From the NCBI RefSeq assembly GCF_003918875.1, contig NW_025767414.1, forward strand, positions 186,001-250,000: DNA of 64,000 nucleotides, in the 5' to 3' direction. Shown one piece after another: positions 49,490-63,001 of this stretch; positions within the stretch are counted from its first letter, which is position 1; every line of letters starts with the position of its first letter. A program made the position numbers and the translations under genes. The notes beneath the pieces are model-generated. The model did not search any database, had not been told where the DNA came from, and saw nothing but the letters and a program-made list of their open reading frames with translations. The stretch comes from Haliotis rubra. Taxonomy: Eukaryota.

Positions 49490-49790
49490 GTCTGATTGGA
49501 TAGTATAATGAGCTAAACAGATTGCCATATATACATAGGTCGTTAATTAATTGGTAAGCACGTCACACGTGACAGTTATGTACACAGTTCTAAATACACA
49601 GTCATTATGCTAATTACATCCGGTTTGATTGGACAATCAGCAAGTCTACGGCTGCCGCATTGCCGACCGTGGACATATATAAGGAGTCGTAGGCATACTG
49701 TACTTCCGTCAATAACAGAATCACGTGACAAACATCCTATCGCCATACATGTGCAAGTGACCTGACTGACTTGGCGGTTGTTTTGAAAGT
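49490..49790 (+). promoter_or_regulatory. Cell-cycle-type promoter: three inverted CCAAT boxes, two E-boxes and a CDE/CHR tandem
   Basis: ATTGG at 49495, 49550 and 49628; CACGTG at 49566 and 49722; GGCGG (49773-49777), 4-nt spacer, TTTGAA (49782-49787). Confidence 0.7.
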
Positions 49791-49832: not shown

Positions 49833-50054
49833 ATGGCGACGATTAAGAAAGCACTGCGAATGTCGATTCGTGGAAAACGGTACAGTGTTCTTGATGGAAC
49901 TCAAACAGACTATTTCAGTACTCCAAAATACGCAAAGCGACGAAACTCCGACGGTGACTCGCCCAACAGTGATGATCGCGGAGAGGTGAGACTCCCTAGA
50001 CGGGGGTCAAAAGTAACCCAGTCGGTCAGAGATGCAGTTGGAAACATTAGACAG
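49833..50054 (+). CDS. S/T-P-rich gene, exon 1
   Basis: GAAATGG Kozak context; MATIKKALRMSIRGKRY...VRDAVGNIRQ|GTAAGA. Confidence 0.8.
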
Positions 50055-56000: not shown

Positions 56001-59000
56001 CAGGGCCTAGATTTTCGAAGCTCTCTTAGCGCTAAGATAGTCGTAAGTATTGTAATGTATGGCACTTACTACTATCTTAGCACTAAGAGAGCTTTGAAAA
56101 TCTAGGCCCTGGTACTTAAACATGATCTATTTCACAATGATTGACAGATTTATGACACAGAGTTATGTAATTACATCTTAGACAATCTAGTTGCACAATA
56201 TGTAGCCAGCAATATTTGCACATGGCTTGAGTGTAAAATTAAATACTCTTTGTACAATAAAAGTCTGGCAACAAATTGGCTCCACTTAAACAGACACACT
56301 TATCAATGTCTACTTACATTATTAACATATTGGGTCAGCCTTTGAAGTTGGTCTCAGTTCTACCATTGTTCATGCTTGACTTTAATTACTAACATTCCCC
56401 CTTACATCCAATGTAAACACAGAAGTAATCCCTAAATTGGCTATTCGTCCATCCATCATGCTAAATAGATACACATTATTCACTGCAACACATGGTCAGC
56501 CTGGACCGGTCTGTCTGTGGACCGGTCAACCCAGATTGGTTCTGGACCCCACTGTGTGGCTGGAGATTAGACTGTCCACACAGCCCTAGGATAGGTCATC
56601 CTTTGTCCAAGAAGGCCATACTGGCCCTTTTATCAAAGTCCTTGTCTTGGCGCCCTGGGGCTATCTCTCCCCTCCCCCTCTCCAGCACCCCCCTGGGAGC
56701 TGTTTGAGTTGTAATGAGTGCTTGAGATGGGTTGCATCATAGGGTGTTAAATGCGGGACACACTGGCCATGTGGCTGGGGTGTGAAGAAAGGGCAGGGGT
56801 TTATCAGGGATTTCAAACTGAGCATCCTTGTCAGACAAACCGAAATATAATACTCAAATTTTAATAAGGATACTTTCATATTTGTCTGTAGTGCACAGAC
56901 CAGTTTCTTGTATTTATATAAGTCGGATTTGAAAATAACTCCAATTTTCTTATTTATTTGTTCATCTTTGATAGTACATAAAACTGATTCTCATATTACT
57001 GTAAGTAAATATTTCAGTATATTGAACATATCTTATTATACCTATCAAAAGTTTGTGTGAAGATGTTTTGTTCAGTATTAGGATTTTATGAAACTTAAAT
57101 TCAAAGGTATTTTACAGTTTCATGTAATACAGTAATGTAAAACTACATGTCTGCACTAGTCGTATTCGGTGAAATACAAGTCACCTCTTTAAGTCCCCCT
57201 TAAAAGCTATAACATTTATAACTAACATAAAAATGTATCAGTAAATTCTTCTTTGTAATTTGTGAAGTTTTACTGACACTTGTGGCAGGCTTTGGGACTA
57301 TTATTGGCCTTGCAGATGGTTTCGATAAATCCTCAAGGGTGTAACCTGATATGTGAAGCGGGTTACTCTGACAGTAATCAAAGACCACTTGATGCATCAC
57401 TGTCAATCATTTCCCTGAACTCACAGTCAACATGGGAGGGATTTATTCAGGATTTTCAACTGAGTATCACCAGAATCCTCCTTTAAGGCAAATTGGTCAA
57501 ATCTTTTTTTGTCATTATTTTCATAAATTCCCATGAATTATCATGATTATAGTAGTATCAAACTAAGTATGAGCATTATCAGCTGTGAAATACCAGGGAC
57601 TTTTTTCGAAACTTAAACATGCTCATTAAAAGGTGAAATTATCCTTGTATTTTGGGTTTTCAGACACTTAAAAAACATTCCTAGTTAAGTTTCCATCACA
57701 TGAACACCTATAACACATCTGGCTTAGCTTATAAAAGATCATTAAAAAATGAACAGTGTTCATCCAAGGCAACACCCCGCATCATAGCCTGAGAAAGCAC
57801 TTCTGTCCAAAAATGTATGATGTCCAAAACCTGTGATCTGACAATAATGAATAAGGAGAAAATATAGTTCCAATTCAAGAGTTTTTCCAACATTTCTTCC
57901 AGCCCAAATGGTCCTGGGCCCCAATCTACAAAGCCTTCTTAGCACTATGACATTCGTAAGCCTATGATAAATAAGAGTTACGACAGGTTGTAACGTTATG
58001 AACGCTTTTTGGATCTGGACCCTGCTCAATATGAATCATGTCTAGATTTTCCACGGGTTCAGTGAGTGAGTGAGTTTAGTTTTACACCACTTTTAGCAAT
58101 ATTCCAGCAATATCATGGCGGGTGACACCAGAAATGTTCCTCACACATTGTACCCATGTGGGAAATTGAACCCGGGTCTTCGGAGTGATGAGTCAACACT
58201 TTAACCACCAGGCTGCCTTACCACCACCCAATCGTTCAGATTCTAATTCCTGTTTCCCTGTTGCTCCATTTAGTTTGAATGTATTGCTTGTCTTTGTATT
58301 TTAAGAGACTGCACATTATTTATTCTAAAGGTGCCCACTATAATGCTCCGTTTTATCTGTTACAGAAATTCCGCATGTCAACCCGCAGGAAGATGAGACT
58401 GAAGGAGAAGAAAGGTGTGTCCCCCCGGACACCCACACGCGTGGGGAAGAGGACCATCGGGAAGACCCCTCCGTAGCGAAGCACCAAGATCTACTCCCCC
58501 TTCTACATAGAGACCCCTAAGGAGCTTGTGAAGGCACCCAGAAATGGACCCCGTATGGGCAAAGGGTAGGTTATGTTTCATTTATCCCAGGAAGTACATG
58601 TGATTCGTAGGGCTGCAACAATTCACCCACACCTCGATTCGATTCAGTTTTTTATATTGGACCCTCGATTCGATCATTTTCGATTTGAGTCTTCATACAA
58701 GTAAAAACATCAGATTTCATTTAACTCTCAGAGTTAAAGTGAGTCAGCTTTTTTGCGTGAAATTCATTGTCAACTTGGCGATGTCTACTAATGACAATGC
58801 ACATTGGATAAGTAGCCCAGCGTCAACCAATCACATTTTGCCTCATATCAGCGCTTGAAACTGTTCGATTTGGATTAAAAATTACGTTCTCGCTGTGTGG
58901 AAACAGTTGAAATAGATACTCAATTATCGAATCGAAATAGTGATAATGGTTATCGAAAATCAAAACTAAGGTGTCAGATTCAATTTTTGATGAATCGAAT

Positions 59001-60869
59001 CGAATCACTGCAGCCCTAGTGCTTAGACTGGATTGTGGGGTTCTGGGTAGGAATTTGGGACACTTGATGACTTGATGACAGAAGTGTAGTGATTATACTC
59101 CAGGTTTGTGGGCAGTTGTTCATGACATCAATCACTGAATTGCTCGGCCGAGACTATTTATATTCAGCTCTCATTGTGACTGTAATATTTCTTAACTTGC
59201 CATTACACAACAAACACACACCTTCAAGCACTGTATAGAGTTGTAATTAGATTATTGAAGTACAGAATTGAGACGACTATTATTTTCATCTCTGGTCCAG
59301 GGTCGAATTACACGAAGAGATGGTAACAAAAGACGAAAACCTTCATACATGTTGACACATTGGCAACTCTGAGAAGTCTTCATGGAATTGGACCAGGTGT
59401 TCTAGACAACTCTTCTCAGTAATCTCAATAGTGCCTAAGAAATTCTGAGTATGTAGTAGAATATTGATACTAGCTCAACCTTGTTCAGAGTTTTTGTATT
59501 AGGTGCAGTCTTTGAGTTTAACCGCTGGGCTGAAGCCTGAGTCAAGTAACTTTCCATTTGGTCTAGTAAGAACAACTAACTAAAGTCCATATGATACCAA
59601 TAAAAACAGAAGAAACAGATCAGTGTCTTCTGGCTTGTGGTTACACAGACAGTCAAATACAACCATGTGTTGGAAATATACCAGAAGGTTCAAATTGCAA
59701 GGGGAAACGTGAGGATACTGAAGTAAGTTTTTGTGAGATTTATAAGTCAGTGAATCAGTGTGATGTATGTTGTATTGCAGACAGATGGTGGAGACTCCGA
59801 CTCGCCTGAGACGGGAGGTGGAAGCACTGACAGCCAACATGCAGGCTCTAGCTGCGCTCACGCCCACCACACTCCGAGACCGAGCAAAGACCAGGTAACC
59901 CTCCACTATAGAGCTCTAAACAACAAGAGGTTTATTATATTTACCAGATGTACAGACAGACCATATTGGAACCTTTGTGAGAGCCCTCCTAGTTGGGTTA
60001 CCATTGTTCCAAACCAGTTACCATAGCTACACAGTCTCCTGGAGGCGGTGGGGTAGCCTAGTGGTTAAAGTGTTTGCTCGTTCCGCTGAAGACTTGGGTT
60101 TGATTCCTCACATGGGTACAATGTGTGAAGCCCATTTCTGGTGTCCCCCGCCGTGATATTGCTGGAATATTGCTGAAAGTGGTGTAAAACTACACTCACT
60201 CACTCCTCCTAAAGGCAGTAATTGATAACTGTTTGTTTTGGACAAAGGACCCTGGAACATGAAACTAGAGTTTATATGAGAGGATCCACATATTTGATCA
60301 ACAGCTGGTATTTACTGATTGACGGATACAGACTTACAGAATGTAGGTGAAACAAATTTGTGCTTTGGGCTAGACATGGCCGCTCGTCTGTTTATTCCAG
60401 ACTAGTAGCAGTCTGGCCTAGTAGTTGTTCGATCCACAAATCTAATTAGTTTGTTTGCATAACTAGCCTGAAATAAACTAGAAATAAATCAGTGTCTTCC
60501 CATGATGGTTTTCGCGATCGGGTGGTCAGGCTCGCTGACTTGGTTGACACATGTCATCGTATCCCAGTTGCATAGTTGATACTCATAATGTTGATCACTG
60601 GATTGTCTGGTCCAGACTCGATTATTTACAGACCGCCACCATATAGCTGCTGAGTGCAGCATATTAAACAACAACCAACAAACCAACCATGATGGTTTTG
60701 TTCTAGTTTGTTAATTTTGGAGCAGCGATGAAATACTATCCCTCACATTATCGATCCTGTCATTCATTTAACCCCTTCTGTTTTCAGGCGACCAGCCTCA
60801 CCCATCACAAATGGCAGCCTGAAAGTTCGAACTCAAGCACGGAGAAGAATCGAGACCACCGTGTACTAA
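49833..60869 (+). CDS. Uncharacterised 4-exon basic, S/T-P-rich protein (possibly a remote PIMREG/FAM64A relative) with an in-frame TAG in exon 2
   Basis: Join of 49833-50054, 58366-58565, 59781-59894, 60788-60869 gives 618 nt with GT-AG sites and matching phases 0/2/2; the only interruption is TAG at 58474-58476. Confidence 0.75.
51774..52180. mobile_element. MITE with CAG termini and a 6-bp TSD
   Basis: CAGAGGTACAGATAAG / CTTATCTGTAGCTCTG flanked by ATTCAT on both sides. Confidence 0.75.
52495..53013. mobile_element. MITE with CAG termini and a 6-bp TSD
   Basis: Perfect 18-bp TIR CAGTCCCTCCTGGATTCC flanked by ATAAAA on both sides; internal AATTCTGCA repeats. Confidence 0.8.
53631..54534. 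repeat. 60-bp minisatellite, 15 near-perfect copies, intronic
   Basis: Successive 60-nt lines are identical apart from rare substitutions. Confidence 0.97.
55319..55736. mobile_element. MITE inserted into an old family B copy
   Basis: CAGGGCT...AGCCCTG with CTGAC duplicated on both sides; family B sequence resumes after it. Confidence 0.65.
56001..56111. mobile_element. ~110-bp near-perfect palindromic MITE
   Basis: CAGGGCCTAGATTTTCGAAGCTCTCTTAG...CTAAGAGAGCTTTGAAAATCTAGGCCCTG. Confidence 0.8.
58061..58229 (-). mobile_element. SINE family A, diverged
   Basis: Family A sequence with CpG decay. Confidence 0.8.
58366..58565 (+). CDS. S/T-P-rich gene, exon 2 (contains the in-frame TAG)
   Basis: TTACAG|KFRMSTRRKMRLKEKKGVSPRTPTRVGKRTIGKTPP*RSTKIYSPFYIETPKELVKAPRNGPRMGK G|GTAGGT. 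Confidence 0.75.
58608..59018. mobile_element. hAT-type MITE
   Basis: TAGGGCTGCA / TGCAGCCCTA; imperfect 8-bp TSD GTGATTCG / GTGCTTAG; subterminal TCGAT repeats. Confidence 0.75.
59781..59894 (+). CDS. S/T-P-rich gene, exon 3
   Basis: TTGCAG|(G)QMVETPTRLRREVEALTANMQALAALTPTTLRDRAKT|GTAACC. Confidence 0.75.
60043..60205 (+). mobile_element. SINE family A, full length
   Basis: GGCGGTGGGGTAGCCTAGTGGTTAAAG...(ACTC)n. Confidence 0.88.
60788..60869 (+). CDS. S/T-P-rich gene, exon 4 (terminal coding exon)
   Basis: TTTTCAG|(R)RPASPITNGSLKVRTQARRRIETTVY*. Confidence 0.72.
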
Positions 60870-63001
60870 AGTGCTAGCTAGACCTCGTGCTGTAGTAGTG
60901 TTGTGATGTCCCATGACCCAAGTTGCCATGACGATACATCACAGAACATCAGTATTCATGATATTACCAATGTTTGTAGACATGCTGTCATGCTGTGTCT
61001 CTTCTGTCTGACACACTGTACACTAGTTGTGTATCTATAGTACCTGTGATCTGTTTGTTTTCATTCATTCACTCACATTCATTTATTTTCTAAATGGCAT
61101 TAGAAATACTTTTTACTATTTTAGCTATGATTTTATTTCATCTTCACTAAGGCTTTTAATTTGCTATCATTAAGCATTTTGTTAATGTTGTGATATTTAT
61201 TTATTTCACCATTTGCTTAAGCTCCTAGGCTTATAATATTCTATTTCATAATTTTTAAACTTTTCTATTATTGCTTATGAGAGGAAAGTGCCAATGTTGG
61301 TATATCTTTTTTCTTTCTGTAGTCAATATCTGCCAATGTACTACTCAAATGAAAGATTAACTGTGAGAATCATGTGTTCTTTAACATCTTTGAAGTAGCG
61401 GATTTAGTTCTCTGATTAGATATGACTAAATATATCCAAATATCACTGATATGAGTGCCTATGGAACAGTGTATATCTGCAACGCCTGGAGAGAATCTTG
61501 ACGAATATCAAACTGGTATACATAATACATGTCAGTATCACAATTTTACAGGGATAGAAATTAACCTTAAGTTTACAACCTTGGAGAGCGTTAATGCATA
61601 GAGAATGACCCAAATTTTTAATATTCTACCAAGCATTGGGAAAGTTTGATTTAGAAGCCCAAGTCTAGTAAATTTCTTTCAGTCAAGTAAGCTTGTCAGT
61701 ACATTAATACTAAGATTTACTGAACTGATGTTAAGAGACAGGTTCAAGCTATTTGACTCGAAAGATTTTGGCTCAGACTGAAATTGACAACTTTCTCAGG
61801 GTATCGTTAATTTCCATTCCTGGGTAGACAACATCAAATATGTATTCATTTACCCTTAGTTGTCAGGTTCATAAGGCATACAGTTGCTCATTGTATCAAG
61901 TTCCACGAAGGTTAAGCCCAATCAACCTTACATTCATTCCAATTTACTTAGGACTTACATGCTCACGCATCTGGAGAAGGGGCTTCAAGGAAAGCTAAGA
62001 GTATTATGATGAACAGACTGACCTGAGAGAAGGAATCAATTCGTGTTGCTCAGTAGATTAGAAGAAAAATGTCAACTGGGGATTTGTTGTTGAAATGATT
62101 TATTTATGACATAGAAGCTAGTTCAAATAACACAGGCTTTGTATATTATTTTACCCATATTCTTAGATAACATTTCATCTTTGATCATCATCGTTCGTCA
62201 TCGCTTGTAGATTTCACAGAATTTGGCCAGTGTGCTTCCAGAATTTGTTTTAAGCTACACATTTACAATATCTTTCTCTAATCTTTTGTCTTAATGAAGT
62301 GAGAAGATTTCTCACTCTTCTCAACTCTCACCTGCATAATAAATTACATATGAGAACTAATGATAGGAAATTCAAACTTGTCCAGAAAATGCTTTAATCT
62401 TTGGCAAATTGCTTCAAGCAAGATCCAATATATTTCCCCTATAAATTTGAATCGTTTTTGGTTAAAATGGTAATTTTGTAATTTAAAATGTTCCGGTGTG
62501 AAGATCAGGGGGTACTTTTGTCATTGTGGTAAACGATAAGATTGAGGGTCTCCAGATTAAAATATTTTAGGAAACAAGTACCACCATACCATAGTTTTGA
62601 ACGTTGTTTTATGTACAAAGTTAGGTGAGTGTTCTCATTGTGAATGTCTAAGTGCATTGTATGCACAGTGTATCTATCTGTAACCTATCTATTGCACAAG
62701 TTGCTGCCATGTGTATACTCACAGAGGTATTCAGCATTGATGTATATATTTCATATGTGCTGCCTTAGTGCTAGTCCCATAGGGACATTCTGTACTTGAG
62801 ATCATCCTCACCAGTCAAGGGTCTTCGCTAGGGGTTACACACTCAGTCCCACTACTGAGCATGTCAGGGAGTAGGTATCTGTATGTTGTCCGTAACATTG
62901 GTCGATCTTGAATAGATCATGAGTTACCTTCAAGGTGACATCCTGTGCATATTTTTTATTGTGTCAAATGAAATATACAGGGTTTTTTTGTGAAGTTCAG
63001 A

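What the first reader, a model, noticed from the sequence alone, without database searches (positions are those of the whole stretch)
58366..60869. Single in-frame amber stop in the middle of an otherwise intact 4-exon gene: readthrough, editing, alternative acceptor or null allele
Seen: exon 2 reads ...ACC CCT CCG TAG CGA AGC ACC AAG ATC TAC TCC CCC TTC... The frame stays open for 29 more codons, and exons 3 and 4 splice in phase (2,2) to a terminal TAA. The product is 205 aa if the TAG is decoded and 110 aa if not. The downstream part looks coding (GC-rich codons, SPF, TPK and TPTR sites, a helical segment). Known: C at +4 favours leaky termination; A-to-I editing turns UAG into a Trp codon; a stop 89 nt upstream of an exon junction would normally trigger NMD. 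Inference: options are programmed readthrough, editing, use of CCCCTCCGTAG as an alternative in-frame acceptor, or simply a nonsense allele or base-call error. The last is the most probable a priori.
Basis: partly seen in the sequence, partly recalled or inferred. Interest (0 to 1): 0.7.

Follow-up and report, generated by a model that had tools for sequence, protein, structure and literature searches.

The report
Private stop codon in abalone gene
The amber stop is a single C-to-G difference found only in this assembly: other reads of the same abalone species, a sister species' DNA and spliced RNA, and three other abalone genomes all read a tyrosine codon there, so it is a sequencing error or a rare broken allele, not a recoding signal.

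Summary

The TAG is private to this sequence:
- Position 58476 is G in the window. It is C (TAC, Tyr) in the best same-species DNA contig (X1), in a sister species' DNA (X3) and in a spliced exon 2-3-4 RNA contig (X8).
- Haliotis asinina, H. cracherodii and H. rufescens also have TAC, and their annotated proteins are exactly 205 aa with Tyr at that position.
- The gene is otherwise intact: dN/dS is 0.04-0.06 and every splice site is kept.

- Readthrough: the stop is not conserved.
- A-to-I editing: it would give Trp, not Tyr.
- The alternative acceptor: its AG exists only because of the G, and it would delete a family-conserved motif.

I put an assembly base error at about 0.5 and a rare null allele at about 0.43. 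Only assembled contigs were served, so I could not separate these two.

The gene belongs to a mollusc-wide, uncharacterised family of about 200 aa. It has a conserved CDE/CHR cell-cycle promoter motif. A link to PIMREG is only a weak lead. The same scan noted this gene separately as s1-325448.

The parts
49773..49787 (+). CDE/CHR-type cell-cycle promoter motif (GGCGG, 4 nt, TTTGAA), 46 nt before the ATG. Inverted CCAAT boxes (ATTGG) lie at 49495-49499 and 49628-49632.
   Evidence: The motif occurs once in the 64-kb window, where 0.03 matches are expected by chance. It is present at the same place in all Haliotis loci that include the promoter: L001, L002 and L003. This is motif-level evidence only.
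49833..50054 (+). Exon 1 coding part: 74 codons, phase 0 at the donor.
   Evidence: Translation. It is identical at protein level to residues 1-74 of H. asinina XP_067683390. Relatives were found by phmmer.
58366..58565 (+). Exon 2: 66 codons plus 2 nt. It opens with the family-conserved motif KFRMSTRR and also holds the YSPF-IETP motif.
   Evidence: Translation. Family alignment A6. The RNA contig of X8 covers 58377-58564 and continues into exon 4.
58474..58476 (+). The in-frame TAG. The base that differs is G at 58476, which is C (TAC, Tyr) everywhere else that could be read.
   Evidence: table 3: G>C at full depth in X1, X3 and X8. TAC in H. cracherodii, H. rufescens and H. asinina. Y in the 205-aa proteins.
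59781..59894 (+). Exon 3 (phase 2 in, phase 2 out). It encodes the most conserved block of the family, ETPTRLRREVEALTANMQAL..LTP.
   Evidence: Translation. Invariant columns. X8 has depth in the two bins spanning 59698-59911, which hold exon 3, and none in the flanking intron bins (table 2).
60788..60869 (+). Exon 4 coding part, with the TNGSL motif, ending in TAA. The 3' UTR runs on at least to about 61226.
   Evidence: Translation. X8 record 24 lies on 60785-61226 and on exon 2 within the same 738-nt contig (table 8).

Best explanation
The codon at 58474-58476 is normally TAC (tyrosine). The G at 58476 that creates TAG is a single-base departure private to this assembled sequence.

I take it most likely to be a consensus or base-call error of the assembly. 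Nothing is decoded, edited or spliced around. The animal's real gene reads Tyr.

Shown: the TAG is absent from every other source that could be read; the exon structure is correct; the gene is under strong purifying selection.
Inferred: the G is an error rather than a real allele.
For: -, table 3: at 58476 the same-species DNA contig (X1, 408 nt, only 2 differences from the window) reads C at full depth. So do sister-species DNA (X3) and RNA (X8).
- TAC in three further Haliotis genomes.
- the annotated orthologues are exactly 205 aa, with Y at this position.
- this Tyr heads a motif Y-R-x-x-K-x-YSPF that is also present in pteriomorph bivalves.
- no other lesion, all splice sites kept, dN/dS 0.04-0.06 against three congeners, including the part after the stop.
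- 58476 is the only place in about 2.3 kb of unique sequence where the window differs from both X1 and X3 among the rows shown.
- other follow-up notes of this scan describe this genome as a Nanopore-based blacklip abalone assembly with many coding-frame errors. I did not test this.
- The base sits between two CpGs (CCG TAC CGA). From general knowledge, this is a context prone to nanopore miscalls where DNA is methylated. This is inference.
Against: - The window differs from X1 at seven other single bases in the same 2.3 kb. At several of them (59918, 59928, 59947) the window's letter matches the sister species while X1's matches organism C. So the window is a genuinely different haplotype, and X1's C does not directly contradict a real G allele.
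- No indel discrepancies with X1 occur in the unique sequence here (table 4), so the local assembly quality looks good.
- The errors that other agents reported for this assembly are mostly frameshifts, not substitutions.
- Only assembled contigs were available. They drop minor alleles, so a heterozygous G cannot be excluded.
Confidence: 0.5

Rival explanations
1. The G is real: a rare nonsense allele (TAC>TAG), heterozygous or individual-specific, of an otherwise constrained gene. Its mRNA would have a premature stop 89 nt before an exon junction, so nonsense-mediated decay would be expected to remove it. Any product would be a 110-aa stub lacking the family's most conserved blocks, which makes it a null allele.
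For: - The window haplotype truly differs from X1 by about 0.4-0.5%, in substitutions only. Some of the window's letters are shared with the sister species (table 3), so private single-base alleles are expected at roughly this density.
- There are no local indel errors (table 4).
- Everything downstream of the stop is still perfectly conserved, as expected for a very young allele.
Against: - No independent source shows the G: X1, X3 and X8 read C.
- The exact TAG-bearing 65-aa ORF is not on record in any public assembly. This is a weak negative.
- Nonsense alleles of a strongly constrained gene (dN/dS about 0.05) are rare.
- Other agents' notes report that the assembly is error-prone.
Confidence: 0.43
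2. Programmed readthrough: the UAG, followed by C, is decoded by a near-cognate tRNA, so that the full 205-aa protein is made from a genomic TAG.
For: - The stop is UAG-C. By general knowledge this is a leaky context.
- The downstream frame is open and conserved.
- X13 (organism C, about 7% divergent) does not read C at 58476. Its actual letter was not shown.
Against: - The stop is not conserved. Six independent sources read TAC there: DNA of four further species (the sister species and three congener genomes), one other DNA contig of the same species, and one RNA contig.
- Downstream conservation is fully explained by ordinary translation through a Tyr codon.
- No readthrough element was sought or seen.
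Confidence: 0.03
3. Cryptic in-frame acceptor: the C>G change creates an AG after a pyrimidine run (CCCCTCCGTAG). Splicing exon 1 to 58477 would skip the stop and remove 37 codons.
For: The skipped length is 111 nt, so the junction would be in frame. The AG exists only in the window's allele.
Against: - In the sister species the RNA contig carries exon 2 from at least 58377, upstream of the site.
- The skipped part opens with KFRMSTRR, which is conserved from chiton to gastropods and bivalves.
- The authentic acceptor, 111 nt upstream, is intact and conserved.
- This reading matters only if the allele is real.
Confidence: 0.03
4. A-to-I editing of UAG to UIG (read as Trp) restores the frame.
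For: None beyond the arithmetic that UAG can be edited to a Trp codon.
Against: - The orthologous residue is Tyr (TAC), not Trp.
- In the sister species DNA and RNA agree on TAC.
- No inverted repeat pairing with exon 2 was found in 58560-60800.
Confidence: 0.01

Closest known systems
Single-base consensus error, or segregating nonsense SNP, in a draft genome assembly
   Same: One substitution creates a stop in a gene with no other defect. Every other source reads a sense codon. Strong purifying selection continues on both sides of the site.
   Different: Nothing differs. Which of the two it is remains open, because raw reads of the assembled animal could not be examined.
Annotated Haliotis orthologues: XP_067683390.1 (H. 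asinina) and XP_046340244.1 / XP_071093098.1 (H. rufescens / H. cracherodii), 'uncharacterized protein', 205 aa
   Same: Same four-exon structure, same length, 97-98% protein identity, same CDE/CHR promoter motif (seen in H. cracherodii and H. rufescens; the H. asinina promoter was not checked).
   Different: They read TAC (Tyr) where the window reads TAG.
Programmed stop-codon readthrough genes of animals (leaky UAG/UGA followed by C)
   Same: UAG-C context, with an open and conserved frame after the stop.
   Different: The defining feature, a stop conserved across species, fails. All orthologues that could be read have a sense codon.
PIMREG / FAM64A / RCS1 (Pfam PF07326), a vertebrate mitotic regulator
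   Same: - Similar size, about 200-250 aa.
- Basic, largely disordered protein rich in S/T-P sites. The Atlas model of P0044 has pLDDT 0.52.
- KEN motif near the N-terminus in most molluscan members.
- Cell-cycle promoter motif.
- It is the nearest named family by language-model features for two orthologues, at 0.76-0.77.
- PIMREG is described as a mitotic regulator of the metaphase-anaphase transition (abstract of PMC9909346).
   Different: No Pfam RCS1 match at E up to 10 in any of 29 family members. All named sequence relatives are molluscs. The feature scores are below the level at which shuffled proteins also score. Homology is not shown.

Membership tests
Programmed stop-codon readthrough | The stop codon is conserved at the same position in orthologues. 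| tested here: not met
   TAC in H. asinina, H. cracherodii and H. rufescens, and in X1, X3 and X8.
Programmed stop-codon readthrough | Protein-level conservation continues in frame after the stop. | tested here: met
   This is explained by ordinary translation, because the orthologues have no stop.
Programmed stop-codon readthrough | Ribosomes translate past the stop. | not testable with these tools
   Needs ribosome profiling or a reporter assay in a carrier of the TAG.
A-to-I recoding of a stop codon | Genomic A is read as G in RNA of the same individual, and the restored residue (Trp) matches the orthologues. | tested here: not met
   The orthologous residue is Tyr. In the sister species DNA and RNA both read TAC. 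No RNA run of the window's own species was served.
Alternative 3' splice site | Transcripts join exon 1 to 58477, and the AG is available in the species. | tested here: not met
   The RNA contig holds exon 2 from 58377 onward. The AG is absent from all TAC-bearing genomes. The skipped motif is conserved across the family. The exon 1-exon 2 junction itself was not seen, because the contig starts at 58377.
Mollusc-wide uncharacterised ~200-aa family (no Pfam) | Full-length sequence similarity and the shared motifs: the SVRDAVG..RQKFR.STRR stretch, YSPF.IETP, ETPTRLRREVEALT.NMQAL..LTP and TNGSL. | tested here: met
   Exon-by-exon alignment to the family. Profile E-values of 1e-27 to 1e-91 among members.
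PIMREG / RCS1 (PF07326) | Significant match to the Pfam RCS1 model. | tested here: not met
   No match at E up to 10 in 29 members, nor in the separate exons of the window.
PIMREG / RCS1 (PF07326) | Similarity by other measures (language-model features). | tested here: inconclusive
   RCS1 clusters are the top named hits for both P0044 and P0018, but only at 0.76-0.77. The tool states that hits under 0.9 are leads only.
DREAM/MuvB-regulated G2/M genes | A CHR element (TTTGAA) with a CDE 4 nt upstream, close to the start, plus CCAAT boxes. | tested here: met
   49773-49787, unique in the window and conserved in L001, L002 and L003. This is motif presence only. Binding and cell-cycle expression were not tested.

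The most novel reading that the evidence does not exclude
The TAG is a real allele that persists because it is tolerated, either through leaky decoding of UAG-C or through use of the in-frame AG acceptor that the same mutation creates. It might even be shared with organism C, whose contig (X13) does not read C at 58476 and whose actual letter was not displayed.
Probability: 0.03. Interest if true: 0.5.

Novelty: already known. Interest (0 to 1): 0.08.

Why it matters
It matters little as biology. It is a clean example showing that a lone in-frame stop in an otherwise perfect gene of this assembly should be read as a base error or private null allele.

Practically, the gene should be annotated as a 205-aa protein with Tyr at residue 111, as in three congeners. 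The stop has probably kept it out of protein sets: no product of this genome's copy appeared in the searches I ran.

The gene itself is worth a look for its own sake, and the scan holds that as a separate finding. It is a mollusc-wide, unnamed, disordered protein with a KEN motif in most members and a conserved CDE/CHR promoter motif.

Tried and rejected
- Pfam scans of each exon piece, of five orthologues and of all 29 family members gave no family.
- A PDB profile search gave nothing meaningful.
- The word search with exon 1 alone found only an exon-1 ORF on a genomic contig of another abalone, because of that tool's length window.
- An exact look-up of the TAG-bearing 65-aa ORF (58279-58473), meant to find independent contigs with the same allele, found none on record. 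This is a weak negative.
- I considered a possible short intron removing the TAG (donor at 58415 or 58417, acceptor at 58476) by eye. The 62-nt version shifts the frame into a stop, the 60-nt version has a poor donor, and the RNA contig of X8 is collinear across the region. Rejected.
- A search for an inverted repeat that could pair with exon 2 found none.
- The sigma-70 promoter scan is irrelevant to a eukaryotic gene.
- The letter of X13 (organism C) at 58476 could not be read.
- No RNA run of the window's own species was served.
- Exons were handled by reference, and the intact orthologues P0023 and P0044 stood in for the whole protein.
Full report
**1. Observation**

The gene model holds exactly.
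- Exon 1 CDS is 49833-50054: 74 codons, ending in phase 0 before GTAAG.
- Exon 2 is 58366-58565, after ttacAG.
- Exon 3 is 59781-59894 and exon 4 is 60788-60869 (TAA). Both of those junctions are phase 2.
- The only in-frame stop is TAG at 58474-58476. It is followed by C and lies 89 nt before the exon 2 donor.
- Termination there gives 110 aa. Decoding gives 205 aa.

**2. Reads**

Only Logan contigs were served, no raw reads, and no run on record as RNA from the window's own species. I laid four runs on 58200-61400.
- At 58476 the window has G.
- X1 reads C at full depth. X1 is organism A, the best holder. Its contig is 408 nt and has 2 differences from the window.
- X3 (organism B, about 4% divergent) also reads C at full depth.
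- X8 (organism B) also reads C at full depth.
- Record 24 of X8 is one 738-nt contig lying on 58377-58564 and on 60785-61226. The 112 letters in between fit exon 3, and X8 has depth in the bins that hold exon 3 but none in the intron bins next to it. It is therefore a spliced exon 2-exon 3-exon 4-3'UTR transcript carrying TAC.
- X13 (organism C, about 7% divergent) does not read C. Rows seen only in X13 were not displayed, so its letter is unknown. TAT would be the simplest guess.

**3. Orthologues**

- A phmmer search with exon 1 and two profile word searches recover about 45 proteins. Every named one is molluscan: gastropods, bivalves, a chiton and cephalopods. Every one is 'uncharacterized'. 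Most are 190-260 aa.
- Haliotis asinina XP_067683390 (P0023) and H. rufescens/cracherodii XP_046340244/XP_071093098 (P0044) are exactly 205 aa. They read ...GKTPPYRNTKIYSPF... where the window reads ...GKTPP*RSTKIYSPF....
- I fetched their genomic loci. The codon is TAC in all three.
- In the family alignment this Tyr heads a motif Y-R-x-x-K-x-YSPF that pteriomorph bivalves share.

**4. The gene is otherwise healthy**

- Exon by exon, with the stop codon skipped and no joined sequence built, dN/dS between the window and the three congeners is 0.04-0.06. dS is 0.16 to H. asinina and 0.34-0.35 to the two American species.
- Every splice site is kept and there are no frameshifts.
- The family's most conserved blocks all lie after the stop: YSPF-IETP, ETPTRLRREVEALT-NMQAL-LTP and TNGSL. 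A 110-aa product would therefore be a null.

**5. The exotic readings**

- Readthrough fails its defining test, because the stop is not conserved.
- Editing of UAG would give Trp, but the orthologous residue is Tyr. In organism B, DNA and RNA agree on TAC.
- The proposed acceptor CCCCTCCGTAG exists only because of the G; TAC genomes have no AG there. It would delete KFRMSTRR, which is conserved across molluscan classes. The RNA contig carries exon 2 from at least 58377.
- I also rejected a short intron spanning the TAG. It would have the wrong frame or a poor donor, and the RNA contig is collinear across the region.

**6. Error or allele?**

These data cannot settle this.

For a base error:
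- No other source shows the G.
- It is the only place among the displayed rows where the window differs from both X1 and X3 in about 2.3 kb of unique sequence.
- The base sits between two CpGs.
- Other agents' notes call this a Nanopore-based blacklip abalone assembly with many coding errors. I did not test this.

For a real allele:
- The window is a genuinely different haplotype from X1. There are seven other substitutions, and at some of them the window's letter is shared with organism B.
- There are no local indel discrepancies.
- Contigs drop minor alleles.

The exact TAG-bearing ORF is not on record elsewhere, which is a weak negative. I put error at about 0.5 and a real null allele at about 0.43.

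**7. What the gene is**

- There is no Pfam family and no PDB relative.
- The ESM Atlas model of P0044 is low-confidence (pLDDT 0.52), which is consistent with a largely disordered protein.
- Most members carry GKEN near the N-terminus. Haliotis and Gigantopelta have lost the KEN.
- A CDE/CHR motif (GGCGG-4 nt-TTTGAA) lies 46 nt before the ATG. It is unique in the window and conserved in L001, L002 and L003. Two inverted CCAAT boxes lie upstream.
- By established knowledge of DREAM/MuvB targets, this suggests G2/M expression. That is inference.
- The nearest named family by language-model features is PIMREG/RCS1 (PF07326), for two orthologues that are about 50% identical to each other. The scores are only 0.76-0.77, so this is a lead and not a membership.

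**8. Verdict**

This is ordinary.

**9. Rule compliance**

- The exons were always given by reference and never joined.
- The protein was never read through the stop.

Noticed in passing
window 49495-49499, 49628-49632, 49773-49787; L001 1517-1531; L002 2939-2953; L003 2938-2952: There is a canonical CDE/CHR pair (GGCGG, 4 nt, TTTGAA) 46 nt before the ATG, with two inverted CCAAT boxes upstream. The CDE/CHR occurs once in 64 kb and is conserved in the three other Haliotis loci that include the promoter. It suggests a DREAM/MuvB-type G2/M gene. This is the subject of the scan's separate note s1-325448.
   Followed up: partly
window 58477-58563 (second half of exon 2): The 29 codons after the TAG show no synonymous difference to any of three congeners. 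The 36 codons before it show 7-9 (Fisher p 0.006-0.03 per species; the comparisons are not independent). This hints at an extra constraint at the nucleotide level, such as a splicing enhancer or RNA structure, or at a local mutational cold spot.
   Followed up: partly
window about 58608-59020 (intron 2): This is a high-copy repeat: contig depth is 10^3-10^5 against about 10^2 in the flanks. Its short terminal inverted repeats are visible by eye (TAGGGCTGCA... / ...TGCAGCCCTA), with internal TCGATTCGA motifs. It looks like a MITE.
   Followed up: no
window about 60019-60232 and 60447-60660 (intron 3): Two stretches have enormous contig depth (10^7). One of them looks tRNA-derived by eye, consistent with a SINE. 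Many 'opposite strands' joints link 60044 to 60516. They are probably related very abundant SINE copies in inverted orientation. The repeat finder did not pair them at its thresholds.
   Followed up: partly
alignment A6, columns 20-30: Most family members have a GKEN (KEN-box-like) motif after R-Y-x-x-L. Haliotis (GTQT) and Gigantopelta (GKQS) lack the KEN. So if it is an APC/C degron, vetigastropods and their neighbours lost it.
   Followed up: no
L002 1-312 and L003 1-258, minus strand: In H. cracherodii and H. rufescens the upstream neighbour on the opposite strand is a GOSR1-type SNARE gene (PF27017, PF12352). I did not check whether the window keeps this neighbour.
   Followed up: no
window 58476, run X13: Organism C's contig covers the site but does not read C. 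Its letter (G, T or A) was not displayed and could not be re-queried.
   Followed up: no
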